Part shown: positions 20,101 through 45,256 of the stretch, in pieces
Layout of the letters: each line of letters begins with the position of its first letter
How positions within the stretch are numbered: position 1 is the stretch's first letter
From: Ascidiella aspersa
Taxonomy: Eukaryota
Direction of reading: 5' to 3'
NCBI GenBank assembly: GCA_963924565.1
Contig: OZ004607.1
Span: forward strand, 35,712,001-35,776,000
DNA length: 64,000 nt
The notes under the pieces: model-generated
What the model saw: only the letters and a program-made list of their open reading frames with translations
What the model was told of the DNA's origin: nothing
Databases searched by the model: none
Translations under genes and position numbers: made by a program

Positions 20101-23100
20101 GCAAGCGAGCGAGCGAAGAACTTTTCCTAACCTGTGAATCTGTCGAGAACTTGTAGTTGGGAAGTACGGCGCGGGTTTGAATCGGCGGCACGTCGTGTTG
20201 TTCCACGAGAAACGGGCCATGGTCGATGGGTTTGGGAGCGTACGAGACCACCTTTTGCTGGTCCAGGCTTAGGTTCTGCGGTGCAGTCGGCTGTAGCCTG
20301 GTGCTGGTTTCGCGCGCGCTGTCAAGTTTGTTGCCGTTGAAGATGCTCAGGATATCGTCGATTTTATGAAGGTCGGCGACTTTGTGGATCTTGTTCAAGT
20401 TGTTGTCGATGTTGTCGATTTGGTTGATCTCGAAATTGTTGTTGTTGTTGTTATTATTATTTCTGTGGTTGTTATTGTTGTTGTTGTTGTTGTTTCTGTG
20501 GTTGTTTTTGTCGTTTTTTCGAGGGTTGGAAACGTCGAAGACGACGAGCGGGTTTTGGAAGCTGAGAATCTGAGAAGCGCCTGAAAAAGGTCGCAAAAGT
20601 ATTGTTTCAAAAGGGCCAAAGAAAACGTTGCCTGTTAAGTTCGCATATGCTTTCTGTCCTGCAAAATTTGTTTAAACAAACCAAAGGCAATCGACTCTCA
20701 ACAAACACACTTTGATTTTCCCTAAAATTCGCGTGCAATCATTTTTGCCTTTTTTGGAAGTACTTTGTCCATGCGATTACGGCAAATTTAATCATGGCCA
20801 AGTATTGCGCTGTTTTTCCTAGTTTTCCGAATCTTTAAAAAATGGTTTGCACAGGCCACATTGAAAAACTACATCTATAACAGCACTTTAGTGGATATTC
20901 ATACTTAATTATCAACATGAGTTTGTCCTGTAAACTAGACAACATTGAGTCCATGTGTCAACGTAAAGCGTAATTATAGAATTTTGTTTTTTTTTAGCTG
21001 TTTTCTCAAAACTTCTCCATAACAAACAAACAAACTAAACAAACGTTAGGCCCTATAGTCAATATACACCTTAACTTACCGTCAGTATCTTCAGTAATAA
21101 AAACAAGGGCGCTGGCGCTCGTGGGTCCAGCAAGGCAAGTGTAGTTGCCAGAGTCCGACTCGCCAGCCTTTAGAATGCGTACTGCCCGGTCGGACTTTCG
21201 CAGCAGTCTGCGTCTGGACAAGGTCATGGGTCGGCCCTCGTACAACCACTCGATAGTACCGTGTCTGAACCTGTGTGTGTGTATTGGTATTAGGAATGTA
21301 TAGGAAAGTAAAAAAACGCCTGTTTTTTAAATTACGTTAGATAATGTATGCACTGGTTTACACCAGGGCTGCGGAGTCGTAGTCGGACTCGGGACTCGAC
21401 CGAGTCGTTTTTTTTTGCAGGAATCGAACTCAGGACTTAAGTAAGACTACGTAAGAGTCCCGAGTCCGACGAGCAGTATTAAATTCAATAGCAATGCGCC
21501 GACAATCTGCTAAGGTTGGAATGCTATATGTTTTGCAGGAACGAATTTCGGGCGGATGAGATATTATATGGCATCCCTATGAGTGGATTGCTGTATATCC
21601 ACCATACTTTAGTTATGTAAATGAGTGGGATATTTTCAAAAGGTTTAAACGGAGTGCTCAAACTTTTTAAGCTTGCTGCACACTAAAAAAATCTTAAATA
21701 TTTCGTGGCACACTTTTAACAAAGAAACGAGAGCTTTCACCTGTTCACTTTGCAGCGAATAACGACTGTCGTGTTTGGGAAAACGAAGGCTTGCGCTCCA
21801 ACGTCGACCCTCACCACCGGCTGGTAATCAGTCTGGATGAAGGGAATCTTCGTTTTCACGATCACAGGGGTTCGAGTTCTTCCAGCGAAAAGACCGGACG
21901 GCCGCCGTATCGGTGACGAAATTCGGCGGTTTGATGAAGCTGACGAAAAAAAATCGAAGTTTTCTCGAGCCGAACAAAGAAGGAAATATCGCTACAGACT
22001 TAAAACGTGTTTTCCGACGTTTTTCTTTGCGGTTGATAACGTGCGGGTGAAATATGCCATGTTTTTCGTCTACTTAACACAAATCGTTATTTGTCGCAGT
22101 CTAGGGCTCTTGTTATTAGATTAAGTATTCACAATTTGCATAGATTTCAGTAAATATTTACCAGGTCGTGTCAAGAATGATTTTATCAACTGATTGAGGT
22201 CGAAAGTGCTTTTGGACAGATGTTAAAGTTTTAAATAATAAAAAAACAGTTGTGTCATATTCGTTTACCGATGATATACTTTTGAATCGTAATGTGGAGA
22301 AATTTCGCTATTACCACACAAAACCAGGTTTAATTACTCCCATATTAGCAGCCAACACAAATTGTTTAATTTTTTGGATCTAAAATCACCTAATAAAGAC
22401 GTCATTTATCGAAATGGAAGAAAGAGTCGAAAAAGATAAATGACTGGCTTTAATTAAGACAGGAGTCGAAATAATATTGCTGAAAGCACTGAGCTTGTAT
22501 ACAAGTCGTCAGTTTTCGCAAAAAAAACTAGTCGCAGCTATTTGGCAAGGTGAAACCATATGTTTTTTTTTTCGATACTGATAACAGATGTTTTAGAAAA
22601 AGTATCGTGACACGACCTGATGCCAAATAACATCATCACTACGCTCAAACAAAAAAAAGATAAAATTGAAAGGTTCAAACGTAGTTTTTTTAGCTTGGTA
22701 CGCCGAATTTGCTTAAAGTTAGGATGCTTGGTTACTATTACAAAAGGTGATGGTAATCCAATTACGGTTAAATTCGACTCACGGCATTATCCAATTGACG
22801 TCATTACTATGTTCAAACAAAAGAACAAAAAAAAGGTTGGTTCGCCGTTTTGCTTAAAGTGAGGATTCCTATTTACTTTGAAAAAGTTGATGTTAATCCA
22901 AATAAGGAATAAATTCCACTCACGGCATCGTGGCAGTTTACATCGTTTTCGGCCGACTGGGCGACGGAGTGCCCGGCACGCCATCTTGTTGACACGCTCC
23001 GGTCTTGATTTGCCTGGCCTCTGCATAATGCACGACACAACACGACGCATAAACTCCCGGCCGCACCTCTTCTTGCACTGCAACGTGTAATGAATTGTCT

Positions 23101-26100: not shown

Positions 26101-29100
26101 ATTAGTGTTGAGTAGCAACAATCTTTGTTGTGGAATACTATAATATTTAATGGTGAAAATAACGGCCCAAATAGACATAAAAAGTGACATGCTTTATTAT
26201 TCAAACGTTTCGGCAAATACTCATGCCATCATCAGTGATATGAAGGCCACATCAGATATCACTGAAGATGGCATGAGTATTTGCCGAAACGTTTGAATAA
26301 CAAAGCATGTCGCTTTTTATGTCTATTTGGGCCGTTATTTTCACCATTAAACTTATGAACAGATCCGTATATAGTGTTCCAAAGTATAATCTTTGTTTGT
26401 GGAGTACCGATGCTGTACCACCCGAAGTATAGGCTTGTTTGGATGAGCATAAAATTGATATTTCGGGCTGTACAGCAACAGACACACGCAATTGTACTAC
26501 ACAAGAAATACTTTTATTGCACAACATGTATTGTACATTCAAAATGGTAAGATTGGATAGTTACTTTATAAAAAAATGCTTGAGTGTTAAACGCCCATGG
26601 TGTGCTAAACGAGTGATTTTTGAACCGGTGTTTTGTGGAACATTAGTGAAATTATTGGGTTTCTTGCGGAACACGTGACCAACCTTTGGGGGCCACTAGT
26701 GTCCCGCGGAACTCCGGATTGAACATCACTGCTACATAGTTACTTAAATACCTACGCAGCTATACGCGCTAGGATTAAGAGTCGCGTGGCCCAGTCATAT
26801 TTGCAAATTGGGCCAAACCACAACTGAAGGCGGCGCACAGCTGTCGGCATGGAAAGCGACCAAAGGACCCAGATGTGGAATGCGGCCAAGCTCAATTGTG
26901 TGGGGCAAGGTAGCGCGCTTTCTCGTGCAATACCTGCGGGACGCTACCCCAGACTTAGCAATTAGTTCGCCGGAAATCGACGCTCGCATGTGGCTGGCGG
27001 CCCGGTGACTGACAGGCTTACGTTGTGTAAGCGTGAAGTATGTGCTCTGGTATGACAGCGTCGCTACGGCTCAACTCTATTGAAAAATCGACCCACGCAT
27101 ACTTTTGCTAACTGCTGTCTGAGGGTAGACCAGCTACAAAATGTGTAATTTTGTACATTTAACTGTGCATTCGTAGCACAACCGTACGTGTTTTTATTAA
27201 TTAACCTGTTTTATAATAAAAGTGGAATATCGTTGGTCATATACTTAAATGTGATAAGGCCAAAGCCGAAGCAGCAATATGCATTCCTACTTGTAAAGGC
27301 AATAATGCACATTCCTGCTTCGGATTTGGCCTTTTTATCACATTTAAGTATATGACGATATTCCACTTTTTATTAAAAAACAGCTTAATTGGTATTTAAG
27401 CAACTTATTTTTTCGGACTTGGGCATAGGCTGACCTTAGATGCCGTGAAAAAATGTTTTAACATTTTCCCCACAATTACGTAATAACGCATAGTTTTGGT
27501 TTGATGCCTTTCACATAACAGGAAAAAATTCTGACAAACAGTCACGGGACCATTTGCGGCTACAAACTAAATTTTTAAAAGCAGAGCCGAAATCGAAACT
27601 CAAAAAGAACGAAATGATTTGAAAGTTTCTCACGGTTATTTTGGTTGAGAGATACCGGACAGAAAAAATCTGATAAGATGGGCAGAGTTTCAAACTCTTT
27701 TTGGAAAAGAAACTTGAAGTTGAAATATCAAACCGAAAATAACACCGATATTCTCTCAACCCAAAGCTAAATCGAAATAATTTGCGAAAATATTATTTTT
27801 AGAAATTTCGCGAAAAACGTCATTTTCCGAGTGTTTCAATATAGGCCCAAATTGAAATAACTCACAGATAAAGATTACAGACTTTCTCCTGCAAAGCATT
27901 GGATGGAAATAGCTTGCGGAAAACGTAATTGCTATTAATTCGCGAAAATGTCAGTTTTCCGAAAAGGGCCGAATTTTCACATAGAAAAAATCGAATTTCT
28001 CCCTAACCCAACATTAAATAGCCGACAATGACGTCAATAAAGAGATAGCAATTCCTTAAGGGCCGGACCCCCGGCTGTCCTACAGCATTGACCTTTACAC
28101 GAAACCCCACGTAGCGGGTGCGGGACAATGGTGACCTTGTGACGTAATAATTGCCGACGGTGTCGTATTGTCACCGCGAGGGCCAACGCGTCGCGAAACG
28201 ACCGAAACGCGGCCTCAGGTTTTTCCGAGCCTCGAGTCTTTACGGGAGCCCCCAATAACCATTTTTACGGGTGTTTGCTTTCGCCTGACCTGTTTATCGC
28301 CTAGGCCGGGGGATTGTCTCTCTGTGGTCGTGAATAGCAAATCGATGGACCCCCCTGACAGGGCTCGTAATATTGCCTTTGTTGTAAAGTTGCGGTTTAG
28401 GGCTTCGAGGGATTACGTAATGCGTTGAGATTACGTAATGCGGATGACGTGTTTCGTGGCAGCAACTTGAAGACGTAACGCTATTGGGGAAGGTGTATTG
28501 AAACTTGTTGTCTTATGCAGGTTTAGCCAACTTATGTTTGATTGCAATCGACTGAAATATTTTTAGATACTCTCGATCAACTGGTTTGATGAAAAGTCAC
28601 AAGAACACTTATTAAACACTTAGAGCGTTAATTGCAATTCAAGTCAGCGATGGTTAATTTATTACAACAAATAACGCTTCATAAGGCTTGTCCAGACAAC
28701 AATTGGTCATTTTAATGTTTCGCTTGTGTGCACTTATAGTTTACTTAAAATCTAAAATAACGGCTAATACTCGAAAAAGGGTTAAGAAAAAGTTAAAAAT
28801 TAGATGACTCTGTAGAATAGCACTGGTTTAGAAATCTGTTACACAGCTGTACTTTTGATAAATCAAAATTTTTTTGCGACAATTGCCCTAAAAATTTAGA
28901 AGGTAACCTTTTTGAAAGATTAGACCGACACCGTAAATCGTTTTTGACAGTTTTGGAACAAGACAACACGAAACCCTGACCAAGTGGGAAGCAAACATAC
29001 CTGAAAACTAAAAAAGGGTCACACATACCGGCTGCCACTTTCTCGTAACGTAGCGTGGCCTGCATTTTCTGGTCATAAGACATCGACGACGGCGGACGGG

Positions 29101-32100
29101 CGGCTTTTTGCTGCAGTATTCGCGAGATACGGCCTCAACCCGACCGGTTCCCAGCATACGTTGGCAGGTCAGGGTGCGATTTTGATAGCCACAAGGTCCG
29201 TCGCACTGGTAGGCAAAAAGGAAAAACTTTGTAGGGCGTGAAAAATAAAGGGGTTTTAGATATGGAATTCTAAAAAAATAGGATCAGAACCAATGCAGGT
29301 AAAATGCTAACACTGGAGTCCTGTAGTTACTGACCCGCTTTCAAATAATTTATTCTTTCAGTGCGAACTTAACAGCCTTTGTCATCTTGTATTTTTTAGT
29401 TGAATTATTGCTTATAATCGGATGAGTTTACCAATTTTAATGGTTTAATCGTTTTATTCTTTTATTACGGGTTTGACTTGGAGATGACTTGCTCTTTAAT
29501 GACTTGACTGCTGAAACGTGACTTGGGCAACTGACGACTTGGGCTGGGACTTGCTCTATTTTAGAAAGACTTGACTTGGACTTAAGTTATTTTACAAATG
29601 ACTTGACTGGGATCAAACTTATTTCAAAAAGACTGTTGCACATAATTAAAATGGTCTCACCTCTTCCCAGGGTGAGGCTACCCATTCGGGCTCGCATGGG
29701 ACTTGGGGGCACACATTGGTCGACGGGGGCTTGGGCAGGGGGCACATCATCTTGGGCATAATCTCCCATGGTTCGCTCTCCAAGTCGTCCGAGTCCAGGT
29801 TCTCCGGCTTTTTCCTGCACACCACGCTTCTCTCCTGGACTCCTCTTCCGCATGTGACGCTGCAATCTCCCCACGCTCCCAGCACCCACCTAGCGGAAAG
29901 AAGAAAAATGAGAGGAGTTATGTTTCTATGTTGTCGCGGGTTGGAGGCTTGTGGATTTTAAGGCTTATATGTGCAGTGTAAGTATTGTTGGCAAAAACAA
30001 CGGCATATATATGTAGAATGAAGTGTCAAATTGACTGGGGAATTTGTTATATTGAATCAAAAAAATAGAGGCATCCCTATATGTGTTTAAATGAGGTTTT
30101 ACATTCTGTGAGGAATGTGTTGTTTATCAAAGCAATCGAGCGTATAATTGCAAATACCATTACTAGAGCTTTGCCCTGATAAATCTCGCGCTGCCCATTT
30201 GGGCGCAAATTACTTCCGCCCCATTTCGGAAGCGCAATCCAAACTAAAAAAAGAAAGGATTAAAACAAAGAGGTACATCGATACCAAAAAAAGCGGTTCA
30301 GCTTCCTTGCTGATAAATCTCTTTCAGTCGATTTGGGCGCAAATACTTCCATCCCATTACGGAAGCGCAATACAAACGAGGAAGCGAAAGGATTAAAAAG
30401 AAAAACGGTATAAGCACGATAACTACAAAAATGAGGTTTAGGGTTTTCTTGTTTATGAATTCGTTTTGTTTTTGGGGTGTTCGTGGTAAAGTTTGGCAAA
30501 ATGCAAATTGGAATCGCGCCTCAGCTTTGCAAAAGCAATAAGTTAATGGGGAGGCTGTTTTTTTTCGGAGGCATTTTAAACCTTGTTTTGTCGCCGCCTC
30601 CGCTCGACTCGTTCGTCAACCACAAAATTTCAATAGGTCGAATTTGGAGGCGGCGCTAAGCGTGGAACGGGATTACGAAAATTAACCGTTGGGCGCGCGT
30701 TAATTGGCAATGAGCGACGGTTCGTTAAACGCCCGAGGCAGGAAAACAGTCCTAATTACAACTGAGGGTTCAGAACAGCGGCGGGGTGAAGTGGAAATTA
30801 GGTTATTCGTCGAAAAGCTTGTCCCTTAGTCAGGGCCTTAATGATCCTGTAGGCCTAAGGCTGTTTACTACAGAAGGGCCTAATTAAACAGCCTAAATGA
30901 AACGATGTATTTATCTACTCACACACAAGCCACATATTGACTCGACTTTTTCATTGATTATCAAGAAAAAACTGTGCTGTATACTGTAACTGGATTTGTA
31001 TCACTATCAGCCTTGTAAAAACCTTTAAAAAATTAGGGACGAATTTTTCCAGGGCCCAAGGCGTATAGCCTTAGTAGCCCAATGCCAAACACTGCGATGC
31101 TTGTCCTCGCTCAGAATTTCTTGCACTCGAAAAAGCAAACTGGCAAAAACAATGCCGGCGCTTATCTCCGCGCGAGCACAAAGCAAACTTTAAAGAGACG
31201 CGACAATAAACAAGGACTCGAAAGAATGCGGCTCCCGATGCGAAAATGCGCGGAATGCGGCGGCGAAAACAAGGGCCCCGTACATCAGGTCGAAAATCTG
31301 CCGGAAAAAAGCAAACAAAGTCCCGCGGGAGGCCGAAACGACGACCCTTCGATGAGTGGTAATTAGGAAGCCGTCGCCACCGCTGTGGGGTCTAACTACA
31401 AAGGGGGCCCATTGTCGTTTCACCATTGTTCCCCGGGCGCTAGGTCCCCGCCCCCAACTTGCGCTACCGTGGCTGGCATTAATCTGGGCACGTCGGAATG
31501 TCGCGCGTTTTGAGGGGTTTGCGTTCGCGATGAAAAGCAAAGACCACCGTCGTGCTACTGTCGAAGACCTCCCACTCCCAAACAATCAGATTCTTGTGGA
31601 AAAAAAGTATTTGGCGGCCCTGGAAATTAAGCTTGAAGTATCACGGCAATAGTAACTGTCAAATAACTGAAATACAGCGTCTTCACATAATAAGTCCTGT
31701 TTCATAGAACAATGAAAGCAAATTTTTGTTTTGTTTTTACATTAATTTGTAATTTCCCCATCGCCTTCCTCCTTTAAACAGGTAAAACGTAAGAATGTAA
31801 ACCTTTGTTTTACTGCTGCTCTGTTTTTCGACTGACGCATGAAAAGAATTCCCTTGGCAGACGTTCAAAGTCCCCGGTGGTTTTGCCCCACGTATCGGTC
31901 AGGAAACCGCATCTGAGGGGTCACGCGGGGTAAATTTGGGGCCGTCTGGGGCGTGTTTTTACAGTGCGTCAGACGGCATCAAAGATATCAGCTCGGTCGA
32001 GAGATAATTTGGGGGAAAATCTTTGATCGTTTTGTTTAGGAGTGCGCGAAATTACACTTTAAGTTGGGTAAATCGACTAGTCATGTTTATGGGGTTTTCA

Positions 32101-35100: not shown

Positions 35101-38100
35101 ATGCGGTACTTTCCAAAGTTTAAAATCACCTACATGAAGGTGGTCTACGTTTTTTTCGTGTGTTGAAGCATACCTTTGAATGAAAACGGTGTTCTCTTCA
35201 GGGTAAGGCCGCAAAAACGGAAATTAAAAATATTTTTTCGTGCCATCCGCGTCATTTTATAAAATCAAGCAAAAATATTTGACAAGTTCAAGAAAGAAAA
35301 TGTCGTAAATTACCACGAGTTTCTGTTATATGGACGTATTTCGCCGCTTTTTATAACTATTAAGTATAAAAATACACAATGATTTTTTAATTAAGGGTTT
35401 ATCTTTTAATTTTAAGGTATTTTTTTTTAATTCAACTTAAAAATATGACCGCCACCACACATTATGCATGTCTGTTAACGGCGCGCGAAAAACAATTCGG
35501 GGGATCCAAAAAAGTCCGGTTAGCAGCTTAGAAATTACGAGAAACCGCAGTCACAAAACTCGGCCAAATTCGATTTCCCCGCAAACGACAACGAACAAAA
35601 AAAACGTTTCCTTTCAGCCGACACCAGCCTTTGCAAAACCCAAGGCTTATTTGCCTTCACTTGGCAGGGCAAACACGTTGGGCAGAACTTTGGCGACCGA
35701 ACGATTGTCCTGTATGGGCAGCGGCGCGGCGGCCTTTATCTTTGCACAGTAGCCGATTGTCCAGTTAATCTGTCCATAACGCGGGCGCCTCTGCTGTTTG
35801 CATTGGCCGAAGCGAAATGGTGGACCAAGCAAGGGGCTGTCGTTTTTCGAGTGGTCTTTGACAAGGAAAAAGGCCCAGTACTATAGGCGGCTACACTGGC
35901 AAATTAGTCGCTGATGCGCGGTAAAACCGGTCCTTGCCTTTTCCATTGAGTTTAAGACGCAAAAATATCGTTTTTGTGTATTAATGGACATTGTGTGACA
36001 TGTTTAAGTGAATTGGATAACTTGAAATAAAATATATAGCAAACAACGGTGCGTGATCTTTATTGTTGATTAGGCATTTTAAGAGGGAATGGATGTAAAT
36101 AAATTTGAGTACGCCGCAATACAAAACAACCTATATGGTTTTGCATAACCATGATTTAGATATAAAAAACATTATTAAAATGGGTGATGTTTTCTGCCAG
36201 AAAAACGAAATTAAGGAATATTTTTTCATTCAAATGGGACCACTTTAAGCCTAAAGGTGCCATGGTTTAAGTGAGAAGCGTATTTTTGTCTAATAAGGTT
36301 TTTCGGCCCTTTATTAACCACCATTTACACATAACGTAACAAGTTTACCATGCTTACCAGGCGTGATAGCTGTCATAATCCCATGCGAACTCGTACATGT
36401 GTGTATTTTGCCCGGGAAAAGATAGACGCCAAAAACGGACAAACATTCCGAACCGACAGGGAAATGTATGAAGAGGTCAGGGCTAATAATACGAAACCGG
36501 GGAAAGATTAGTGGAGGAAAATTTAACCAATATGGTGGGTTTTGATTCCTAGGAAATGCGACTACCATTGGAACCAAATAAGGGACCGTTTTTGTCTAAG
36601 CGATAAAGCTCGGTATGAAGTGTTCGAGCTGTCGTGTAAATCATCCCACGAAACATTTTTAAAATCTCTCAGACCGGCGTTTTTTTCACGAGACCAGGAA
36701 ATATTTGCCGCAAAAACAAGATACAACAATTTGGTGGGTTTCGGTTAAGCTAAATTAATTCAAAGTTAAACTTGGTACGAGGTGATATTCGTAAAATCGA
36801 CACATTCGCCCGTTTAAAGTTTTCCATCGTATTCTCAGGGTTAAGGTTTAAGGCCTCGACGGAAATCCTTTCCAGCAAAAATTTCAAAATTTTCGCGGCC
36901 GAGTTTTGAAGCCGGCGTCGTTTCACGAGCTCGCGCACAACTCAGTTGCGAAATCGAAAACAAAATTCCGCGCGTTGTCGGTCGTAAAGCGGCGATTAGC
37001 CACGTGCGAGAAACGAGCGCTATTTGTTTTCACACGCCGAGGTGAAACCAGGCAGCGATCGATTGGCCTACAGCAGTAGTTCTCAACCGGGGTGCCGCGG
37101 CACTTCAGGAAGGGGCCATTTTTAACGCACAAGGTGGCCGAGAGATATATCAAAACCTATAAGATTCCAATTTAGCTTCTTGATACAATTTTTTGTGTAC
37201 GATCAAAGTTCCAATAATTAAAAAGGTTTTTTTATCAAGCACAGTTAATGTGCTGTTTTAATCTCGTTTATTGTCACGTTACAGTTTAACCACTCTGCAA
37301 AATACAAGCAAGGGTGCCGCGAACTATTCATAGTTTCTATAGGGTGCCGCAAGCCAAAACGGCTGGGAAACACTTTCCTAACAGTAACCCGAGGCCGATT
37401 ATGGGCAGGGCACTTTAAACAGCACCCGGCGTCCAAAAATCGCAAAGCGAAACTGTTTCGCGGGCGATTCTTTACCACCTGCAGGGCGCAAGAATCCATC
37501 ATGCTGACTTAACGCTCGGCAGACTTCAAGGCAACCTTTCACATTGCGAGCCGCAATGTTTGTCGAGTTATACCGCGTTTGTCGTGCCGCAAAGCTAAGA
37601 AATCCCGCCAAATAATTTCCCCGCCTGTCCGCATGATTTCTGATCGCTGACATTAGCTTACGTACAGTATAAGCAAGCCTGGTTTTTGCCGTGTATTGAT
37701 GTATTAAGCCAATTGAAAAAAAATTTTCCCTTGTTTTGCGTAAGTGACTAAACTTATTTCGATCCGTGATGAGTTGGGCTTGAAAAAAATAGACAAAATA
37801 TAAAAATATTTTCGGAAATACTTTTTTTCACAACCAAGAGTACGAGGAATTAGCTTTGGGTATGACAATAATATCAAAGCCTTAATAATCAAAGTATAGT
37901 TGACGGTTGCAAACAATAAAGGATAAAAAGTAAACCTACGATCATGATTACCTCAGAAAATCTGTGTTGCACTACTTTGTTGGCGAAACAAACATTATGG
38001 TGACCATCATAGTCTTAGAAGTATTCTCAAAATACATAAAAGCCTTGATGTATATTTACAATTGACCACGCACACTAAAGAAAAAACGTAACTCAATATA

Positions 38101-40862
38101 ATCATTATTGCCCTTGGAAAATTACCCCAACCATTGTCGCCCTAAGACTTAGCAAGTTCCAACCGAATGCATTGGCAAATCTATTAGATCGTTTACTCGA
38201 AAACGATAGCTAATGACGTCATTGTTTCGTTACAGATCACACGAAGCTTGCGATTTCGATTGCACATAGCACATAGGCTTTTATTTAGTTTTTGTCTGAC
38301 CACTACAGTAGGCAGGGCTACAAAGCGAATATTTACTGAAGTACATTTTAAAATCTAAATGGTGATTTTCAACATTTTAAATCTTAATTGGCCCAATATT
38401 AACACAATGAAACTGCAAGCCCCTTCTATAAATGTATCTCATAAAATTAAAATAAGCCACGACAAAACAAATCAGGTTGTTGGTAACGATGAAGAACCAA
38501 ACAGAAGACGAAGTCCTTATAACACAGCACTTATGTTATTTTTAGCACGTTCTAAAAAGGTGGACAATTTGGATTTTTCGCCAAATACGTATTATGATAA
38601 ACTATCAAGCACAAAATCGGTTTCTAGCCCGAATTGGTCTGCACTAAAGGTTCGGGCCAAAAATTAAGTCGAAGCAGCATTCTTCAGCCGCGTTCGGTAC
38701 GGCGCCAACAGTGACCAGGGTTGGGGGGTTTTGGGAGGGGCCAGGGACGCGTAGGCGCGACGTCTCAAACGGGGACAAACAGATTTTCGGCTCAGGGCCC
38801 GCTGGTGGCGCCTGGGGCGGAAAATTGGGGGAGGGGCGATCCCGTAAACAAACAAGATCAGCTGCAGGTGTGTCCAGCGCTGTTACTGAAACAAAATCGA
38901 CAGCGGGAAAGGTAAGAGGGAAGGGTCGGTTTACGTTTCGCGGTTTAAAGGCGTAAGCCGGTAATGAGGTGCCAGAACTCGGCAGGGTTGCGTCATTTTT
39001 TTTGAAGTCCACCGAACGGACAACACTCGAGTTTTATTGTCGTAAGGTGCGATTTTTGTGGGAACTGTGAAACCGGTTCTTTTAGGTTCAATTTTGGGGT
39101 AAGCAGATTTTTCCAGAGTTGTACGTTTGTAAGACTTAACTTTGTGTTATAACGTTCATGAAAAACATCCATTAGGTATTGTTCCAAAAATACATCCGTT
39201 TTGAGGTATTATATCGGGTGGCACTCAGGACCGAATTAAGAATACTGTAGGCCCTATACTCACACACAAGGCACATTCATTCGTTTTTAAGCAAAAACTG
39301 TTCTGAATCTGTATCACTATCAGCCTTACGTCAATTTAACCTTAAAATTTTTTTTCCCAGGGCTTAAGGCTATAGCCTCAGTAGCCTAATGGTTAATCCG
39401 GCACTGGTGGCATTATAAAGCCACAAAGCCGTTTAAATACAAATTTTCGATTTTCCTCAAAGGCAGCAGTGCCGTGAAACCTCTAATGTTGTCACAATCA
39501 CCGGCACCACAATCGAGCACGCATTAAACAGCAATAGGGGCGTGTACCCACGTCGAACGCCAAACGCCGCAAAATTCACGTCACAAGCAAACCGCGAAGG
39601 AGCAGCGCCCTTCGACCGCAAAGTTGTCAAAGTGGCCGCAAACCTGGCAGCTCCTTGTTGCCTTGTCGTGCCCAAAGCGCCCATAAGCAGCTTCAGCTGG
39701 GGCTAGTTGGTTTGGCGTGCGATTGACGCAAAACGCGGACTATAGGACAAGCAATCGTTTTTGGATCACTTTTGATGCTTCCTTACCTGTTTGGGATAGC
39801 GTCGGACGTTTCAGCGACGCGAAAGAGTAGGAGAAAGATGGAGAGGCGCACCAGAAAGACTAAAACGCCTGGGAAGGGAGCCTTTTTGCTCCGGCTCCTC
39901 TTTAGCGCAACTTCTCGACGCTTCTTGTCTCTTAGCGAGCCACGCTCGTCAAGGAAGCCTACGACTTCCGGCCGTTGGCGTTGTACTACGCCCGCTGGAT
40001 CACTACAAAGGATACTACTACTGCTGCTTGTGACAAGTATTGTGCGGTTGCTGGGTGCGGGCGTCTTAGGCCGGTATTCGCACGGTTGCGATGAGAAGCG
40101 TTCATAACGCGGCCCAACGCATGACGCAGTGCCAGTGATGCCGCGTTCGGTAATGTCGTCACCACTGCCGCTGCGGTCTGAGCTTGCCCTGAGCTCCAAA
40201 CCACATCTAGACCGGGTGTCTCGAGAGGCGACAAGACCGCAGCTATGATCGCGCGCCAAGTGTACGGCCTGAGGAATTGGCGCGGCGCTTTTCATCGAAA
40301 TCTGACGTTGACGAATCGACGTTCGTCCGTGCATCGACCAAAGCCGGCCTTCCTTCATTTCCGCTTCATTAAATCGCCCGGCGGATATCTGACGTTGAGG
40401 GATCGGCTCCGAGTCGGGGCGGCGCCAAAGCTGAGCAGTGAACTTCAATCCAGCACCCTTGGACGAATCTCGGCGGGCGAGCGGCGGACGACAGCCGAGT
40501 CCGTTTCGAGTGCGCCCAAGATCACTTAAAAGCCCTTGACTTGGCGTTAGATTGCCGTCCGAGTGACGGCGGGTCCTGGTCTTACATGTGCCTGTTGATT
40601 TTGCCCTGATCCGCCTCTTAAAGCCACCACGCGAGTCTGGCCTGCTTTCGCGCCGTTGGCGGGCAATATCGCGTCGTTTTGCCGGGGCTTGCGTCGTCAG
40701 CGATGCCAAAAATGTAAGAAGCCGCTGGAGGTTTGGCTCGCTCGGAAGTGTACAGTGGTTTGGTGGTTCTTTAGTGTGCTGGGGTGGGGAGTACGGTGTT
40801 TTGACGTTTTCAGTATTGCTGCCGCAGCGGCATGCAGGCTGCGCGCCTGCTTCAAAGCCCAT
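8056..40862 (-). CDS. ADAMTSL1/3: ADAMTS-like protein (Punctin/MADD-4 family), spliced model: join(40862-39787,29889-29661,29205-29029,23077-22924,21939-21741,21270-21080,20580-20132,18620-18488,17835-17613,16783-16524,15795-15613,14837-14703,12682-12467,11844-11661,10880-10673,10202-10081,8808-8567,8156-8056); 4482 nt, ~1493 aa
   Basis: All junctions are GT-AG and phase-consistent. Domain order 3xTSR-Ig-linker-3xIg-4xTSR-PLAC with no metalloprotease domain. The pre-Ig segment PVIVKTKIPFIQ...VDVGAQAFVFPNTTVVIRCKVNRF resembles the ADAMTSL1/3 'YIQ...VGG.AYLLP.T.VV.RCP.RR' segment as I recall it. The first exon is less certain than the other 17. Confidence 0.9.
8422..8463 (-). ncRNA. Minimal type I hammerhead ribozyme motif (Penelope-like element type)
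   Basis: AUGAA-CUGAAGA-U-GGUAC(aagcuc)GUAUC-GAAAC-GUC^-UUCAU: intact core, 5-bp stems I and II, palindromic ACGU stem III. A broken inverted copy lies at 8485-8507. Confidence 0.7.
8567..8808 (-). CDS. ADAMTSL1/3: Exon: last TSR (NSSCPNRRCVPVWVSSPWSVCSKACGRDGFRTRILRC...)
   Basis: ttttctcccacgtag| acceptor, G|gtgaga donor, 242 nt, phase 2 to 1. Confidence 0.94.
9312..9358 (-). repeat. Degenerate hammerhead-like/Penelope remnant
   Basis: CUUGAACAA-GGCGAU(uugaauag)AUUGCC-GAAACGUU: stem II and GAAAC intact, CUGANGA core mutated. Confidence 0.4.
9725..9935. repeat. 'aagtcaagtc/gacttgactt' repeat family; also ~8826-8895, 18755-18905, 23085-23345, 29470-29640, 32255-32340
   Basis: Recurrent aagtc pentamers with shared aaaacagtgactt. 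Confidence 0.65.
10081..10202 (-). CDS. ADAMTSL1/3: Exon: TSR (CSKKCIGRGVGRRLRRLHCMSGDGTKELPRSACKGQPRPTR)
   Basis: tttgtgttacag| acceptor, AG|gtacgt donor, 122 nt, phase 0 to 2. Confidence 0.93.
10673..10880 (-). CDS. ADAMTSL1/3: Exon: TSR (FITGRWESCSATCGNGTRTR...CFSGSCPWWKPGPWRR)
   Basis: tttttctcgtatacag| acceptor, AGG|gtaagc donor, 208 nt, phase 2 to 0. Confidence 0.95.
11661..11844 (-). CDS. ADAMTSL1/3: Exon: TSR (VYSYAVGNFSECSSECGPSGFKRRMLRC...PCNRVDCPPR)
   Basis: tttcccatctatttag| acceptor, AG|gtaatc donor, 184 nt, phase 1 to 2. Confidence 0.93.
12467..12682 (-). CDS. ADAMTSL1/3: Exon: Ig4 (GCPVTGFPEPEVVWYFNG...VGVYTCTGTNEGG...)
   Basis: cccctctctag| acceptor, G|gtaagc donor, 216 nt; I-set motifs. 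Confidence 0.95.
14703..14837 (-). CDS. ADAMTSL1/3: Exon: linker and start of Ig4 (DPPHETNQ...VKANSSVMM)
   Basis: tttttctcctcag| acceptor, G|gtaaga donor, 135 nt, phase 1 to 1. Confidence 0.88.
15004..15354. repeat. 'ccgata/tatcgg' MITE family; other copies ~19615-19742, ~34065-34183, ~57030-57062
   Basis: Shared gtatcggatcggcaccgatacc..ctagtatcgg and ...ggacatc(c/t)ct ends. Confidence 0.7.
15613..15795 (-). CDS. ADAMTSL1/3: Exon: end of Ig3 (AYPEPYVIWRKD...DQGLFACEATNPSGSDYQASTLVLI)
   Basis: ttttccaacag| acceptor, G|gtgaga donor, 183 nt. Confidence 0.95.
16116..16327. mobile_element. MITE with ~30-bp imperfect TIRs, PIF/Harbinger-like ends
   Basis: tttacactacagctgggtgagctg ... aactcagcgcagctgtagtgtaaatggaccc. 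Confidence 0.6.
16524..16783 (-). CDS. ADAMTSL1/3: Exon: end of Ig2 and start of Ig3 (DNSLRI...DAGVYTCVARN...VTIRCPAN)
   Basis: gttgctag| acceptor, G|gtgaga donor, 260 nt, phase 2 to 1. Confidence 0.95.
16850..17300. repeat. Degenerate minisatellite-like array; related pieces at ~14360-14560 and ~15420-15520
   Basis: Recurring ggaattt(t/c)cgataat..ctgtgaacattagac..cattcctt..gaccaaaaaa. Confidence 0.55.
17613..17835 (-). CDS. ADAMTSL1/3: Exon: first half of Ig2 (...VDILCEATGNPPPAIEWYKDEIKLPDSNLR)
   Basis: ctttgtcacag| acceptor, AG|gtaggt donor, 223 nt; CxAxGxPxPxIxW I-set motif. Confidence 0.93.
18488..18620 (-). CDS. ADAMTSL1/3: Exon: acidic linker (IERFLVQFQTKLQEENETSDSDLFEIESNLEQTGSPEALFRIPQ)
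   Basis: ttattcag| acceptor (in-frame alternative starting at 18599), A|gtaagt donor; supplies the needed phase 0 to 1 bridge. Confidence 0.8.
19759..20089. mobile_element. hAT-type MITE
   Basis: TIR caggggttcttaaact/agtttaggaaccccct; TSD not preserved. Confidence 0.7.
20132..20580 (-). CDS. ADAMTSL1/3: Exon: low-complexity Asn-rich linker
   Basis: ctttttcag| acceptor, CAG|gttagg donor, 449 nt open frame, phase 1 to 0 fits both neighbours. Confidence 0.85.
20436..20512 (-). repeat. Coding (AAC)n microsatellite, two NHR-N9 blocks
   Basis: Plus-strand (gtt)n runs; translates KNNHRNNNNNNNNNHRNNNNNNNNNF. Confidence 0.9.
21080..21270 (-). CDS. ADAMTSL1/3: Exon: second half of Ig1 (FRHGTIEWLYEG...ESDSGNYTCLAG...)
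   Basis: acacag| acceptor, G|gtaagt donor, 191 nt; Ig core Trp and DxGxYxC motif. Confidence 0.93.
21741..21939 (-). CDS. ADAMTSL1/3: Exon: linker and first half of Ig1 (...PFIQTDYQPVVRVDVGAQAFVFPNTTVVIRCKVNR)
   Basis: ttttttttcgtcag| acceptor, AG|gtgaaa donor, 199 nt, phase 1 to 2. Confidence 0.93.
22924..23077 (-). CDS. ADAMTSL1/3: Exon: TSR (CKKRCGREFMRRVVSCIMQ...CRALRRPVGRKRCKLPRC)
   Basis: cacgttgcag| acceptor, C|gtgagt donor, 154 nt, phase 0 to 1. Confidence 0.93.
25805..25823 (-). promoter_or_regulatory. Consensus CTCF-binding motif
   Basis: Minus strand TAGCCACTAGGGGGCGCTA matches the CCAC(C/T)AGGGGGCGC core. Confidence 0.6.
26146..26351. mobile_element. Inverted repeat (96-bp arms, 14-nt spacer) with a hammerhead-like core on each strand; Penelope-like pLTR remnant
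   Basis: Arms 26146-26241 and 26256-26351 with 3 mismatches; CUGA(A/U)GA-U-GGCA..UGCC-GAAACGUU on both strands. Confidence 0.7.
27197..27390. repeat. Fold-back (MITE-like) inverted repeat, ~85-bp imperfect arms
   Basis: aaaagtggaatatcg..gtcatatacttaaatgtgataa..ggccaaagccgaagcag pairs with ctgcttcggatttggcc..ttatcacatttaagtatatgac.gatattccactttt. Confidence 0.85.
29029..29205 (-). CDS. ADAMTSL1/3: Exon: TSR (CDGPCGYQNRTLTCQRMLGTGRVEAVSREYCSKKPPVRRRRCLMTRKCRPRYVTRKWQP)
   Basis: ttttgcctaccag| acceptor, CCG|gtatgt donor, 177 nt, phase 0 to 0; six-Cys TSR spacing. Confidence 0.92.
29661..29889 (-). CDS. ADAMTSL1/3: Exon: TSR (R-WVLGAWGDCSVTCGRGVQERSVVC...CPQVPCEPEWVASPWEE)
   Basis: ctttccgctag| acceptor, GAG|gtgaga donor, 229 nt, phase 2 to 0; WxxxxWxxCSxTCGxG motif. 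Confidence 0.95.
30830..31094 (+). mobile_element. Diverged copy of the 39226-39406 MITE family
   Basis: Shared tactcacacacaag, tgtatcactatcagcctt, tatagcct.agtagcc.aatg. Confidence 0.7.
37075..37374 (+). mobile_element. hAT-type MITE (agggtgccgc subrepeats); related fragments at ~18350-18412 and ~26630-26732
   Basis: cagtagttctcaaccggggtgccgcggcac...ggctgggaaacact; three gggtgccgc motifs. Confidence 0.65.
39226..39406. mobile_element. hAT-type MITE with 8-bp TSD
   Basis: TIR caggaccgaattaa/ttaatccggcactg; TSD gtggcact/gtggcatt; related copy at ~30830-31094. Confidence 0.8.
39787..40862 (-). CDS. ADAMTSL1/3: Putative alternative first coding exon (358 aa + 2 nt): long basic/Ser-rich N-terminus, then a hydrophobic signal/anchor segment, ending ...SDAIPNR
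   Basis: Longest ORF in the window. Start context aaagATGG with an in-frame TAA upstream. Ends AAC AG|gtaagg (phase 2), matching the phase-2 acceptor at 29889 (AG+G = Arg). Hydrophobic APFPGVLVFLVRLSIFLLLFRVA at 39881-39813. Confidence 0.7.
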
Positions 40863-43800
40863 CTTTGCAATTTTGTGGAGCGTTTCTTGCTTTAAGCAGA
40901 CTTGAACTCGCCCTATTGATTAACCATTGCATAAAATCAAAAAACGAATTCTGACGAAAGGTCAAACAGAGGTTTAAAAGGTTAAGGTTGCCACTCGGTG
41001 GTTGGCGCGAAATCAGTCTTGTTAATATCCAACCACAGAAAATAACATAACACCAACGAAATCTGCCAAAAGTAAGCCAAAATGTTTTACACAAAGATTT
41101 CTGACAAAAATTGCAGAAAGCTGCTAAAGCTATAAACCAGTCTAGATGTTATCTAATCGCTTGGCAACATTTAAAAAAAACACACTCATACGTTAATACA
41201 TTACACATTTAAACACTTCCATATATATCGTGCTGGAAAAGTCAACATTCGGCCCCTATGGTCACTTAAGACGACAACCTTAAAAAAGCGCAAGGGGACA
41301 CCCTAAAATGTTCAGCCCTCTTTGCAGCATGTCAAGCGTGCCAATGTACATAGCGAAAAACATCCTAAGGGGCTAAGGTTACGGTAGCAGTACGCCTATA
41401 CTTGGAACTAAACCTCGCAAACACGGCGAAGACAGTAGGCTGATTTTCACGGGAACTGCTTAAGCGAGTGACTCTTTGTGTTTAACAAGGCAAACTAACG
41501 GGAACGCTTCTAAGGAGGCCGTCATTATACGCGACCAGTGGTCACTTTTCGAGCGGTCAGTAAGCAACCGGATACCAGAATTGTTCTGGTCAGAAGTGGC
41601 CCCCGAGTCGAGTTTCAACTTGGCACGGAGCCAGGACTGTAAGGCGACCCCCTGTGGACAGAACGAGCCCCTTTTGGAATTCAACGTTTGCCTAATGATC
41701 GAGCCACGTTGCAATGTTTGCTTAGCATACGCCTATCCGAAATGGCCGTTGTTGCGCTGACCACTGACCACACAGACCATCGTGGCTGAACAAATTGAGG
41801 GCCAAAATAACTCGCCGACTGAAATAACTGGTCAACAAACGCAGCTTGGTCACCTAGGCAGGATTGCCATTTATTAGTTGAAATTCCATTAAGCTGTTTG
41901 CCCGTGACTTGCTATGTATGTTTTAATCCATTTCGAAATTTGGCATTTGATGAAAACGCTGCAATTCAGATCATAAGCCAAAGTAAATTTTGCGTTCATT
42001 GAACGCAGTTTTGTGTTGTCTTGGTATTAGTTTAAAACATCCCATTGCGTTATAATAAAAGTAGAAGGTTCGAACTTACAATACAGACAATAATGTCGTG
42101 GCCAAGTTAACATGCATGAAAGCACGAAGCTTCAATTTTATGTTGTTCGTCCTCAAAGACAAATAAAGTTCGCTCTAAAGATATTATTTGGGACTTGGGT
42201 TGGAGAACATCTGGTGAATACAGCCGCATTAGTTCCTTCTCACTAAAGGCATTCCTTATTTGGCCCGGACAAAACCACCTTTTTTTAATAGCAACTACAA
42301 AACCGGGCGGCCCCTTTTTCAACTTGCTACCTCGGGCATGACGTAAGCATGCTTTGAAGCCTAGATTAGTTCCACATGTGGTTCCGTCGGTCGCGCAAGA
42401 CAAGCTGTACAAATAAGACCCCGCCACCCCGTTGTAGTAACAGCAACAATAGCAAACTATCTGCGATGCCGCGGTTAGCCGCAAACAACATTATTCCAAG
42501 TTACAAATTGGCGAATAATTAGAAGGCTTTGTAGGCAGTCACGTGCAGTTAAGCACGTTAAGGCCGCTTTAAGACGCCTGTATTAAGCAGTCAACAAGCC
42601 CAGCGTTTGTATCCACGCTGGTGAAATAGAGTTCGAGCGTTTAGCGCATTTCCTCAATTTAATCCCTGATAAAGTATTTGGGCTAAAACCCCTGCTGAAC
42701 AACGTTAAATCTAAACATCCGCGTATGGAAAAATATCCCGAGTTTACATGAGGACTCATACCAAGAAGCTTACCGCAAGATAACGCATAAATCCGGACTC
42801 TTTATGTTAAAAACTATTCCAATTCCTACTAAACTCCGAATATATGTGCAAACGTTGCGAAATGACCAAACTATAGCTATAGCTATTTATATCGAAATTT
42901 ATCCATAAAGGGTATTACTTTAGTAAATCGAACTCCTATACTCGTTGCAAGTAAAATTCAGCTCAATTTAATACTCAATGTTCTGACAGCTTACTTTAGT
43001 AAAAATGTTACATAAAACTCGAGTTCGCCTGAACACTCAAAACACCCAAGTTTTCCTGAAGCCCCAAATCCCCAAACACGTTTCAGCTGACTTTCAAATT
43101 GCCGCAAAAACACAATATATACACCATTTCGCCCGAAACAATATATACTCAATTTCGCCCGAATCCAGCCTCAGTCAATCAATGCCTCTTTTGTCAAGCG
43201 GTCTTCATTATAGCCAGTCCTGCGTGGAGCGGGGTGAGTACTGAGTAGTTTGGACGTCAGGCAGCACTCCAGTGTACGTGAGGTCGTCGTGACGGCCAGT
43301 GGGGTATTTTTGTCACGTCCACTGCTTTTTCCCATGCCAGATAATTGCTTCGTTTCCACGACCCACTTCGCTTTGCTACGGAAATAGCCGAACGCAGAGG
43401 TAGAAATGCGACAGGGGCGAAACGTTAAAGCGGAACATATCGAGCCATGTGGGTGGGTTTAACGTTTTATATTATCGCGTGGTTGTTTTTCAGCGCAAAG
43501 CTAGGGCTAATGGCTGAAAACGACAGATTTTCTTGGTCTTAATACATTCCGAGACCTAAAGTTCGGCCCGTGCATTGACCCTGTAAAACGTGGTCTGTTA
43601 AAGCGTTTATGAAAACGACAAAGTCGTACCTTTGTAAAACCCTATCTGGGTGTAAATCTATAGGGATCTGATCTGGGAGCTGTTTGCTTTAAAACCGTTA
43701 AAAGCCTGTTTAAAACTTAATCTTTGGACGAAGCTTGCTTGGGTGTAGATTATATAGTTAGAAGAGTGTTATTATAGTAAGGTTTCTCGCAAAAGTGGCA

Positions 43801-45256
43801 TATGCTCTGAACCATATCGAGCCATTCGTGGTTTCTGTCTAGAGCAGTGCTTCTCAACTTTCTATGAGTGGTCCCAAACCTCTTGTTCACGTTTTTGAAA
43901 CGAGAAATCAACGCAACAATGGCCCAACTTCTGTTTTAAAACGTGAATTGCTCTGCCAAATTTGCCACATAGGCGACATTCTCAAGCACGTGGAAACACA
44001 CGGTGGAAAAAATTCCAAAACTCCGGAAATTCTATAGCCCGTGTTTGCCTAGAGATCACGCGAAATCCGCATAACCCCTTAATCATGGGGCATATTGAGG
44101 CACTGCGGCGTGTCATAACAGTTATTGCAGCGAAGCGCGCGGTTAGGTGGGGGTCGGAGGGTTAAGTTGGGGTCGCAACATAAATGATGTCATCTATTTG
44201 CTCAGTAAACGCGCTTTTCGCCACTTTTAGCGCGAAATAGAGGGTATTTGGATGGTGTGCGGTTTTTATGAAGGGAGCTAAGTTTAAAAAGGGGCGGCGA
44301 AAACTGGATACGTGACCCAGAACAATGGGGCCTTTATGTGGGGCCTATGGGGGCCTCGATTTGCCCAAACAGCACAACACGTGCGTGATGGGAGTCCCCG
44401 ACAGGGCGAAAGAAAGTTGATGTTATTGTTATTTTAGCTTCCTGCTGCTGGTACTGAGTGAAAACTTGTTTTTAAATCATTGAACCTATATACAGGATGT
44501 TATTAAGTTCGCGTCGGAAATAACTTGTAATAAAACTAACCAAAACCAGCTCCTCTGGTAATTGTAGTTGTTAACCAACATTTTTTTTTCGCCTTCTTAG
44601 GCGGGAATGACATCGAAGGCTCGTAGTAATAAAACACTACACATAGTTTAGTGAAAAAAAACAGCGATAAAAAGAAAAAAAAAACAGCGATAAAAAGAAA
44701 AAAAACTCTTTTTTCAGTTTCCATTGTTTATATTTCACAATTTGTTTTCTGGACGCCGATTTTTTTTCATAGCTGACGCGATCGACATTGCAAAGGGCTA
44801 ATTTTTGCCTTCTGTAAACGCGGGAGGCATTCTTTAACCGATTTCCGGAAAGGTTCAATTTTCCCGTATTAAAATCGCCGGCGCTCCACACAGATAGGGA
44901 ATTCCAGCGCGCGTAATAACGTGCCATTAACATGTCAGCGCTCCAATAAGGCGAGCGTGTAATTGCGGCGTGTTGTGGAAATGCCGGCTGCCAGCCGCTG
45001 CGAGCAAACTTTCGCTAATTAACAGCTCTTAAGGACTCTGGCGTCTCTTGCTCGCGGCCCCACAGCTTTGATCGTTCCTTTTAAGGCGAGCGATAAGTAG
45101 CGCCAGCAATTGTGGCCGGAACTGTTTGAGCCTATTTTAGTTCGAATGCTGCGGCGTGTCGAGTAACGGGTCAGGGCCAGTTTGCCAGAAGGGAAGCGAA
45201 TGTCAACGGCACGCAATAGTCAATGAAATAAATGATACACACACATGTGTTTAACC

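What the first reader, a model, noticed from the sequence alone, without database searches (positions are those of the whole stretch)
39787..40862. Hidden first exon predicts a 'short Punctin' isoform, starting three TSRs before Ig1, with a novel 358-aa N-terminus
Seen: the window's longest ORF starts at aaagATGG, has an upstream in-frame stop and ends in AG|gtaagg. This phase-2 donor joins the 29889 acceptor in frame across a 9.9-kb intron (...SDAIPN-R-WVLGAWGDC), with no ADAMTSL-like sequence in the exon itself. Established: C. elegans madd-4 makes long and short Punctin from alternative promoters; the short form (MADD-4B) begins with three TSRs followed by the Ig domain, and the two forms differ in cholinergic versus GABAergic synapse specification. 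Inference: this lineage has an equivalent internal-start isoform entering at the same architectural point, either ancestral or convergent.
Basis: partly seen in the sequence, partly recalled or inferred. Interest (0 to 1): 0.85.

Follow-up and report, generated by a model that had tools for sequence, protein, structure and literature searches.

The report
Orphan signal-anchor exon in ADAMTSL intron
A 1.1-kb open reading frame inside a 49-kb intron of a sea-squirt ADAMTSL (Punctin-type) gene looks like an extra first exon that would anchor a short form of this matrix protein in the membrane. Its sequence looks evolutionarily young, a second and more classical signal-peptide exon lies nearby, and no RNA evidence could be obtained.

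Summary
On the minus strand an ATG at 40862 opens 358 codons with an in-frame stop 20 codons upstream. They end in CAG|GTAAGG at 39787. That phase-2 donor reads in frame into the TSR exon at 29889, which is followed by three TSRs and then Ig1. It is the window's longest ORF, single copy, with no Pfam match and no relative among 1.84 billion proteins.

Exon-like features:
- The frame has 0 stops against 11-19 in the other five frames.
- The donor is the only one matching 8 of 9 consensus positions in 11.6 kb.
- The last 30 residues form a hydrophobic helix with charge +7 before it and -2 after it.
- 29889 is the best phase-2 acceptor downstream.

Features against an old coding sequence:
- Codon-position and amino-acid composition match random DNA that merely lacks stops, unlike every real-exon control.
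- The product is predicted disordered.

The host is an ADAMTSL gene of an ascidian. Its long form also enters 29889 through a phase-2 donor. A third phase-2 exon, 26 kb upstream in the same intron, carries a classical signal peptide and is the closer MADD-4B analogue; another reader of this scan had already noted it.

Best reading (about 45%): a young, lineage-specific alternative first exon making a type II membrane-anchored short ADAMTSL.

The parts
40920..40922 (-). In-frame TAA that closes the reading frame 20 codons upstream of the ATG
   Evidence: Translation.
39787..40862 (-). Candidate alternative first coding exon: ATG plus 358 codons plus 2 nt (phase 2). Single copy, GC 55-59% in a 41% GC intron.
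39819..39878 (-). Hydrophobic segment, residues 329-348. It is the only confidently predicted helix (331-355). Net charge is +7 in the 15 residues before it and -2 in the 10 after it, so it is a predicted signal anchor with the N-terminus in the cytoplasm.
39781..39789 (-). Splice donor CAG|GTAAGG, 8 of 9 consensus positions. It is the only donor of that quality on the minus strand between 29889 and 41500, and the read-through stop TAA lies inside it.
39253..39412 (.). Dispersed repeat of about 150 nt (more than 300 candidate copies in the genome) in the intron just downstream of the donor. It is not part of the exon.
29890..29912 (-). Acceptor AG with its polypyrimidine tract (89% pyrimidine). 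It is the best of 450 phase-2 AG sites between the donor and this exon.
29661..29889 (-). Shared exon holding the first TSR (TSP1_ADAMTS) and the W-motif of the next TSR. It can be entered in phase 2 from this exon, from the signal-peptide exon and from the long-form exon.
29056..29205 (-). Body of the second TSR.
22925..23083 (-). Body of the third TSR.
21009..21991 (-). Ig1, split over two exons (21740-21991 and 21009-21326).

Best explanation
The ORF is an evolutionarily young, lineage-specific alternative first exon of an ascidian ADAMTSL (Punctin-type) gene.

Proposed mechanism, all inferred:
- A transcript starts inside the 48.8-kb intron. This could come from an internal promoter or, in an ascidian, from spliced-leader addition at the AG about 50 nt before the ATG.
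- Translation starts at 40862.
- About 328 disordered, basic residues stay in the cytoplasm.
- The hydrophobic helix at residues 329-348 acts as a signal anchor.
- The 39787 donor joins the 29889 acceptor.
- The three TSRs, the Ig domains and the C-terminal TSRs then lie outside the cell.

The result is a short ADAMTSL that is tethered to the membrane instead of secreted.

Shown: the ORF, the donor, the frame match, the helix prediction, the charge asymmetry and the host-gene architecture.
Inferred: transcription, use of the splice, the topology, and the idea that selection acts only on keeping the frame open and on the anchor.
For: - The frame has 0 stops in 378 codons against 11-19 in the other five frames, and 0 of 5000 shuffles reach that length. 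About 0.07 such runs are expected by chance genome-wide.
- The donor CAG|GTAAGG sits exactly at the ORF end and is the only 8-of-9 donor in 11.6 kb. The background is about 15 per 64 kb per strand.
- The phase matches the next TSR exon, whose acceptor is the best of 450 AG sites.
- The terminal hydrophobic helix is the only confident AF2 element, with pLDDT 88-90. Its chance probability is 6.5e-5 under the ORF's own composition and about 0.01 by the empirical rate in this T-rich intron.
- Charge is +7 before the helix and -2 after it, which puts the TSRs outside the cell.
- A scan of the whole intron for 'ATG, hydrophobic end, donor' found this exon as the only strong phase-2 candidate, and found none on the plus strand.
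- It cannot be an in-frame cassette exon. There is no phase-2 acceptor in the open frame before the ATG, and no in-frame AG inside the ORF has a pyrimidine tract above 0.63.
- The sequence is single copy.
Against: - There is no RNA evidence of any kind.
- Codon-position composition equals that of random stop-free DNA (chi2 11.1 against a null of 8.3, p 0.23), whereas all 7 real coding chunks give p <= 0.018.
- Amino-acid composition equals the random-codon expectation (p 0.16, r 0.93), whereas all controls give p <= 0.015.
- The codon-usage frame margin is only 0.05-0.07 bit per codon, and one antisense frame scores higher.
- No Pfam family matches, there are 0 hits among 1.84e9 representative proteins, and the language-model recognition score is low.
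- A classical signal-peptide exon in the same intron already offers a short secreted form.
- In the papers I read, Punctin/ADAMTSL proteins are described as secreted, and I found no report of a membrane-anchored one.
- The hydrophobic stretch is coded by a tract that is 75% pyrimidine, and such tracts are common on this strand.
Confidence: 0.45

Rival explanations
1. It is an independent nested orphan gene. The ORF is transcribed on its own and not spliced to the TSR exons, giving a 359-residue tail-anchored membrane protein: a disordered cytosolic part, a transmembrane helix 12 residues before the stop, and the stop TAA at 39783-39785.
For: - Unspliced, the ORF ends 11 residues after the helix, which is the layout of a tail-anchored protein.
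- An AATAAA lies 750 nt downstream, at 39038.
- The same intron holds a second unique orphan ORF on the same strand, L002:6535-7329, with 265 codons, 0 stops against 7-17 in the other frames, and no donor at its end. Free-standing orphan ORFs therefore exist here.
Against: - The stop lies inside a near-consensus donor. For an unrelated stop this has a chance of roughly 2e-4 to 4e-3.
- The phase also fits the next TSR exon.
- A strong donor followed by a strong acceptor on the same strand would normally be spliced.
Confidence: 0.2
2. It is not a functional coding sequence. It could be a GC-rich unique patch, such as a regulatory element or a non-coding or leader exon, whose long open frame arose by chance or very recently and is not expressed or not selected.
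For: - Composition by codon position and by amino acid is what random DNA without stops gives.
- Period-3 signal is weak, 1.8 against 6.3 in known exons.
- The product is predicted disordered, with mean pLDDT 44.5.
- It has no relatives.
Against: - Chance expectation is about 0.07 per genome and about 0.012 for the 51 Mb scanned so far.
- The coincidence of donor, phase, terminal helix and charge asymmetry would need a further factor well below 1e-4.
Confidence: 0.25
3. It is a relic of a mobile element or virus whose ORF is still open.
For: It is a GC-rich island in an AT-rich intron, with a dispersed 150-nt repeat 375 nt downstream.
Against: - It is single copy by DNA and by protein in the 308-Mb genome.
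- There is no Pfam hit in any frame.
- There are no hits in 1.84e9 proteins, a set that includes viral and metagenomic ones.
- No terminal repeats were found, only one short 23-nt inverted pair.
Confidence: 0.05

Closest known systems
C. elegans MADD-4B / PunctinS (short Punctin from an internal promoter)
   Same: Both are ADAMTSL genes. The short form lacks TSR1, the Cys-rich module and the spacer, and begins with an isoform-specific first exon that joins the TSRs lying before the Ig domain (PMC13142758, PMC11385328).
   Different: - PunctinS has a classical signal peptide and is secreted. This exon encodes about 328 disordered residues followed by an uncleaved-looking anchor.
- There is no sequence similarity.
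- This gene has several Ig domains, and no PLAC domain was found for it.
- Expression is unproven.
Signal-peptide exon in the same intron (L002:2128-2303, minus strand; window coordinate 66128-66303)
   Same: Both lie in the same intron on the same strand, and both have an ATG, a hydrophobic signal and a phase-2 donor that fits acceptor 29889.
   Different: - It has 58 codons with a textbook signal peptide.
- Its donor is CA|GTAAGT.
- It lies 36 kb from the acceptor rather than 9.9 kb.
- It is the better analogue of the madd-4B first exon.
Vertebrate ADAMTSL1 / ADAMTSL3 (punctin-1 and punctin-2)
   Same: The long form here follows the same order: TSR1, Cys-rich module, spacer, TSRs, Ig, further Ig domains and TSRs.
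   Different: - The papers I searched describe no C-terminal short form made from an internal promoter, and no membrane anchor, for these proteins.
- The PLAC domain was not found here.
Young or de novo coding exons and orphan ORFs
   Same: The ORF has random-like amino-acid and codon-position composition, predicted disorder, no homologues and is single copy.
   Different: At 358 codons it is far longer than most ORFs described as de novo (from my own knowledge, not checked here). It also carries a non-random functional-looking end, the anchor plus the donor.

Membership tests
ADAMTSL / Punctin (host gene) | N-terminal TSR1, then the ADAMTS Cys-rich module, then the spacer | tested here: met
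   The exon pieces are colinear on the minus strand:
- TSP_1 at L019:2993-3112.
- ADAMTS_CR_3 profile 21-92 at L018:8221-8505, and profile 87-115 at L004:5675-5833.
- ADAMTS_spacer1 profile 47-96 at L004:4073-4312.
Each piece is below the whole-protein cut-off because it is a fragment.
ADAMTSL / Punctin (host gene) | No metalloprotease domain | tested here: met
   None of the 6 Reprolysin matches in the genome lies within 4 Mb of this locus on contig C1.
ADAMTSL / Punctin (host gene) | TSR arrays of the ADAMTS type with Ig domain(s) | tested here: met
   PF19030 matches seven exons of the window, and I-set/Ig_3 match five.
ADAMTSL / Punctin (host gene) | C-terminal PLAC domain | tested here: inconclusive
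   There is no PLAC match in the window or in the 10 kb downstream. The nearest, C1:35907448-35907540, belongs to the next gene upstream. The model has only 31 positions and an intron could split it.
MADD-4B-type short Punctin isoform | Isoform-specific first exon with its own start codon that joins in frame just before the TSRs preceding the Ig domain | tested here: met
   ATG at 40862, upstream stop, phase-2 donor at 39787 and phase-2 acceptor at 29889, followed by three TSRs and then Ig1.
MADD-4B-type short Punctin isoform | Own cleavable N-terminal signal peptide, secreted product | tested here: not met
   The only hydrophobic segment starts at residue 329. No residue with a small side chain sits at both -3 and -1 after it. 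The neighbouring exon L002:2128-2303 does meet this feature.
MADD-4B-type short Punctin isoform | Transcript from an internal promoter | not testable with these tools
Type II (signal-anchor) membrane protein | One hydrophobic helix of about 20 residues, no N-terminal signal peptide, and more positive charge on the N-terminal flank | tested here: met
   The 19-residue hydrophobicity (Kyte-Doolittle) mean is 2.32 at residues 332-350. The AF2 helix spans 331-355. Flank charges are +7 and -2. This is prediction only.
Long-standing protein-coding exon | Codon-position asymmetry, non-random amino-acid use, detectable relatives | tested here: not met
   All real-exon controls from the same genome passed.

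The most novel reading that the evidence does not exclude
A first exon born recently from intronic DNA turns a secreted synapse and matrix organiser (Punctin/ADAMTSL) into a type II membrane-tethered protein with a long cytoplasmic tail rich in basic-kinase motifs. This happens in a chordate that also keeps a classical secreted short form and the long form, so one acceptor is fed by three alternative phase-2 donors.
Probability: 0.3. Interest if true: 0.65.

Novelty: new variant of a known kind. Interest (0 to 1): 0.4.

Why it matters
Long and short Punctin made from alternative promoters decide cholinergic versus GABAergic postsynaptic identity in C. elegans. Whether chordates use the same gene logic is unknown.

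This ascidian locus offers two candidate internal first exons that enter at the matching architectural point. That makes the question testable with a few junction-specific RNA assays.

If the 358-codon exon is used, it would be a rare worked example of a young, random-like exon acquiring a function. The function would be a membrane anchor placed in front of old extracellular domains, and it would give the first membrane-tethered ADAMTSL.

If it is not used, it is a useful caution: long intronic ORFs with good splice signals occur in this genome.

Tried and rejected
- Homology:
  - Pfam on the ORF, on all other frames and on neighbouring GC-rich ORFs gave nothing.
  - phmmer against 1.84e9 representative proteins gave 0 hits.
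  - The ESM Atlas gave no usable hit.
  - Rfam on 36000-44000 gave nothing.
  - The search for homologous proteins with the 76-residue TSR exon gave no candidates in the allowed length range. Annotated isoforms of the orthologue in other ascidians could therefore not be reached.
- Species control: the genome's own proteome is not in the database. The nearest relative, Phallusia mammillata, is only 56% identical on myosin-XIX. The blank for a disordered exon therefore says little.
- Repeat or mobile-element origin: rejected, because the sequence is single copy.
- In-frame cassette exon of the long form: rejected, because there is no usable phase-2 acceptor.
- Other acceptors between 39787 and 29889: none is convincing. 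A 47-nt mini-intron to the AG at 39740-39741 would stop after 12 codons (read).
- Codon-usage frame test with about 9 kb of training exons from this genome: inconclusive.
I rebuilt the seeds from coordinates instead.
- Step left out: the spliced protein was never joined, searched or folded. Only single exons were used, by reference.

Full report
**The observation**

The minus strand carries an ATG at 40862 in the context aaagATGg. It is followed by 358 codons and the two bases AG, then GTAAGG, so the exon would end at 39787 in phase 2. The frame is closed by a TAA 20 codons upstream of the ATG. Unspliced, it stops immediately at AGG TAA. It is the longest ORF in the window, 359 aa against 224 for the next.

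The acceptor ttctttccgctag|G at 29889 continues the frame as ..IPN-R-WVLGAWGDC. This is the start of a TSP1_ADAMTS repeat with E 7.6e-11. From there three TSRs precede the first Ig domain.

**Is the open frame more than chance?**

The frame has no stop in 378 codons. The other five frames of the same 1134 bases have 11-19 stops, and 13.5 are expected from base composition. None of 5000 dinucleotide-preserving shuffles reaches 378 codons: mean longest run 142, maximum 363.

I used the local composition of 214 kb of this genome, leaving the locus itself out. On that basis about 0.07 such runs are expected in the whole 308-Mb genome, and about 0.012 in the 51 Mb the scan has read so far.

The ORF fills a GC-rich island (51-66% GC per 100 nt). 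The island's 5' edge coincides with the start of the ORF, inside an intron of about 41% GC. It is single copy by DNA and by protein. The nearest repeat is a dispersed element of about 150 nt at 39253-39412, downstream of the donor.

**The host gene**

- The best database relative of a control protein from this genome, an intronless myosin-XIX, is Phallusia mammillata at 56% identity. Clavelina, Ciona and Styela follow. The genome is therefore an ascidian whose own proteome is not in the database.
- Upstream of the window, on the minus strand, the pieces lie in order: a TSR1 piece (window coordinate about 107.0 kb), two colinear pieces of the ADAMTS Cys-rich module (102.3 and 89.7 kb), a spacer piece (88.2 kb) and about five TSRs (87.2-78.7 kb).
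- No Reprolysin match lies near the locus.
- The last upstream exon, L003:4680-4833, ends ..NVNNT plus AG|GTGAGT, which is again phase 2. Its only in-frame continuation is the 29889 exon, across a 48.8-kb intron.
- Downstream follow three TSRs, Ig1, a low-complexity linker exon, further Ig exons and four TSRs.
- A PLAC domain was not found for this gene.

The gene is therefore of the ADAMTSL1/3-Punctin type, and the ORF lies in its largest intron in the sense orientation.

**Evidence that the ORF is a spliced exon**

- CAG|GTAAGG is the only site matching at least 8 of 9 donor consensus positions on the minus strand between 29889 and 41500. The background is about 15 such sites per 64 kb per strand.
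- Only a phase-2 donor of the GTRAG type places a stop right after the exon. An unrelated stop codon would sit in such a context with a chance of roughly 2e-4 to 4e-3.
- Among 450 AG sites downstream, 29889 has the best pyrimidine tract (0.89) and the longest in-phase open frame.
- The exon cannot be an in-frame cassette of the long form. No codon of the open stretch before the ATG begins with AG, and no in-frame AG inside the ORF has a pyrimidine tract above 0.63.
- Residues 329-348 are strongly hydrophobic, with a Kyte-Doolittle mean of 2.32 over 19 residues.
- AlphaFold2 predicts 287 of 358 residues below pLDDT 50. The single confident element is a helix at 331-355 with pLDDT 88-90.
- The 15 residues before the helix carry net charge +7, and the 10 after it carry -2. 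This orientation would place the following TSRs outside the cell.
- Under the ORF's own composition, such a segment in the last 38 residues has p = 6.5e-5. This overstates the case. The segment is coded by a tract that is 75% pyrimidine, and in this T-rich intron strand such segments occur at about 0.075 per kb per frame. That gives an empirical chance near 0.01.
- A scan of the whole 48.8-kb intron for 'ATG, hydrophobic end, donor' returned this exon as the only strong phase-2 candidate. It returned nothing on the plus strand.

**Evidence that it is not an old coding sequence**

| Test | ORF | Controls from this genome |
|---|---|---|
| Base composition by codon position, against random codons without stops | chi2 11.1; null 8.3 ± 4.6; p 0.23 | Seven equally long chunks of real coding sequence: chi2 21-190, p <= 0.018 |
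| Amino-acid composition, against the random-codon expectation | p 0.16, r 0.93 | TSR, Ig and myosin exons and the gene's own disordered linker exon: all deviate, p <= 0.015 |
| Period-3 signal | 1.8 | 6.3 in known exons |
| Codon-usage model trained on about 9 kb of exons from this genome | Prefers the ORF frame over the other two sense frames by only 0.05-0.07 bit per codon; one antisense frame scores higher | Correct frame wins in 26 of 28 |

In addition, no Pfam family matches, there are no hits among 1.84 billion representative proteins, and the language-model recognition score is low. Given the distance to the nearest sequenced relatives, the lack of homologues is weak evidence. The compositional result is not weak. 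Apart from being open and ending in an anchor, the sequence shows no trace of selection on its protein.

**A rival first exon**

I confirmed it.

- It has an ATG with A at -3 and a textbook signal peptide: a basic start, a hydrophobic core and ..CAEA before the likely cut.
- It has 58 codons and a CA|GTAAGT donor in phase 2. This gives ..DEDM-Q-WVLGAW.. on the same acceptor.
- PunctinS of C. elegans has its own signal peptide (PMC13142758), so this exon is the closer analogue of the madd-4B first exon.

Three phase-2 donors can thus feed acceptor 29889: the long form, the signal-peptide exon and the ORF exon.

**Reading**

- The most likely explanation, about 0.45, is a young lineage-specific alternative first exon that gives a type II membrane-anchored short ADAMTSL. 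Only the open frame, the anchor and the donor matter to it.
- An independent nested gene for a tail-anchored orphan protein explains the terminal helix but not the donor and the phase (about 0.2). The second unique orphan ORF in the same intron keeps this rival alive. That ORF is L002:6535-7329, with 265 codons, 0 stops against 7-17 in the other frames, and no donor at its end.
- A non-functional open frame fits the composition but needs several independent coincidences (about 0.25).
- A mobile-element relic is unlikely (about 0.05).

**Literature**

Long and short Punctin from alternative promoters, with different synaptic roles, are confirmed in PMC13142758, PMC11385328, PMC7260190 and PMC6920096. 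The claim that MADD-4B starts with exactly three TSRs could not be verified: PMC13142758 places TSP4 to the Ig domain in the middle part, and the paper that would settle it (PMC7705314) is not held. I found no paper on ascidian ADAMTSL and none describing a membrane-anchored ADAMTSL.

**Limits**

- No RNA tool worked.
The spliced product was neither assembled, searched nor folded, and all searches used single exons by reference.

Noticed in passing
L002:2128-2303 (-), which is G000:C1:35778128-35778303, 2128 nt beyond the window end: A 58-codon exon with a classical signal peptide and a phase-2 CA|GTAAGT donor that fits acceptor 29889. It is probably the true MADD-4B-like start. It was already noted as s1-806526.
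   Followed up: partly
L002:6535-7329 (-): A second unique orphan ORF in the same intron and on the same strand. It has 265 stop-free codons (0 stops against 7-17 in the other frames), random-like composition, ends in TAA TAA without a donor, and has no Pfam match.
   Followed up: partly
window 23144-23227 and 22790-23104 (-): A short local duplication of the start of the third TSR exon. A truncated copy of its ..CKKRCGR.. motif lies about 100 nt upstream, which looks like a pseudo-exon copy.
   Followed up: no
window 39253-39412: A dispersed repeat of about 150 nt, 72-81% identical to more than 40 scored copies (321 candidates) across all large contigs. It looks like a SINE or MITE.
   Followed up: no
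window 51800-53000 and 58400-60300: Further GC-rich, mostly unique patches in the big intron. They hold 120-160-codon open frames on both strands and short embedded repeats of 50-130 nt. Their role is unknown.
   Followed up: partly
G000:C1:35907448-35907540 (-): A PLAC domain match 131 kb upstream of the window end. It probably marks the C-terminus of a neighbouring ADAMTSL- or papilin-like gene in tandem orientation. No PLAC was found for the gene studied here.
   Followed up: no
L007:1930-5064 (-), which is G000:C6:6281930-6285064: An intronless 1045-codon myosin-XIX gene, 56% identical to the Phallusia mammillata protein. It served as a species and coding control.
   Followed up: partly
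window 38647-39033 (-) and 39460-39702 (-): Two more GC-rich stop-free stretches, 129 and 81 codons, just downstream of the donor. They share a frame with each other but not with the ORF, have no Pfam match, and I assigned them no splice signals.
   Followed up: partly
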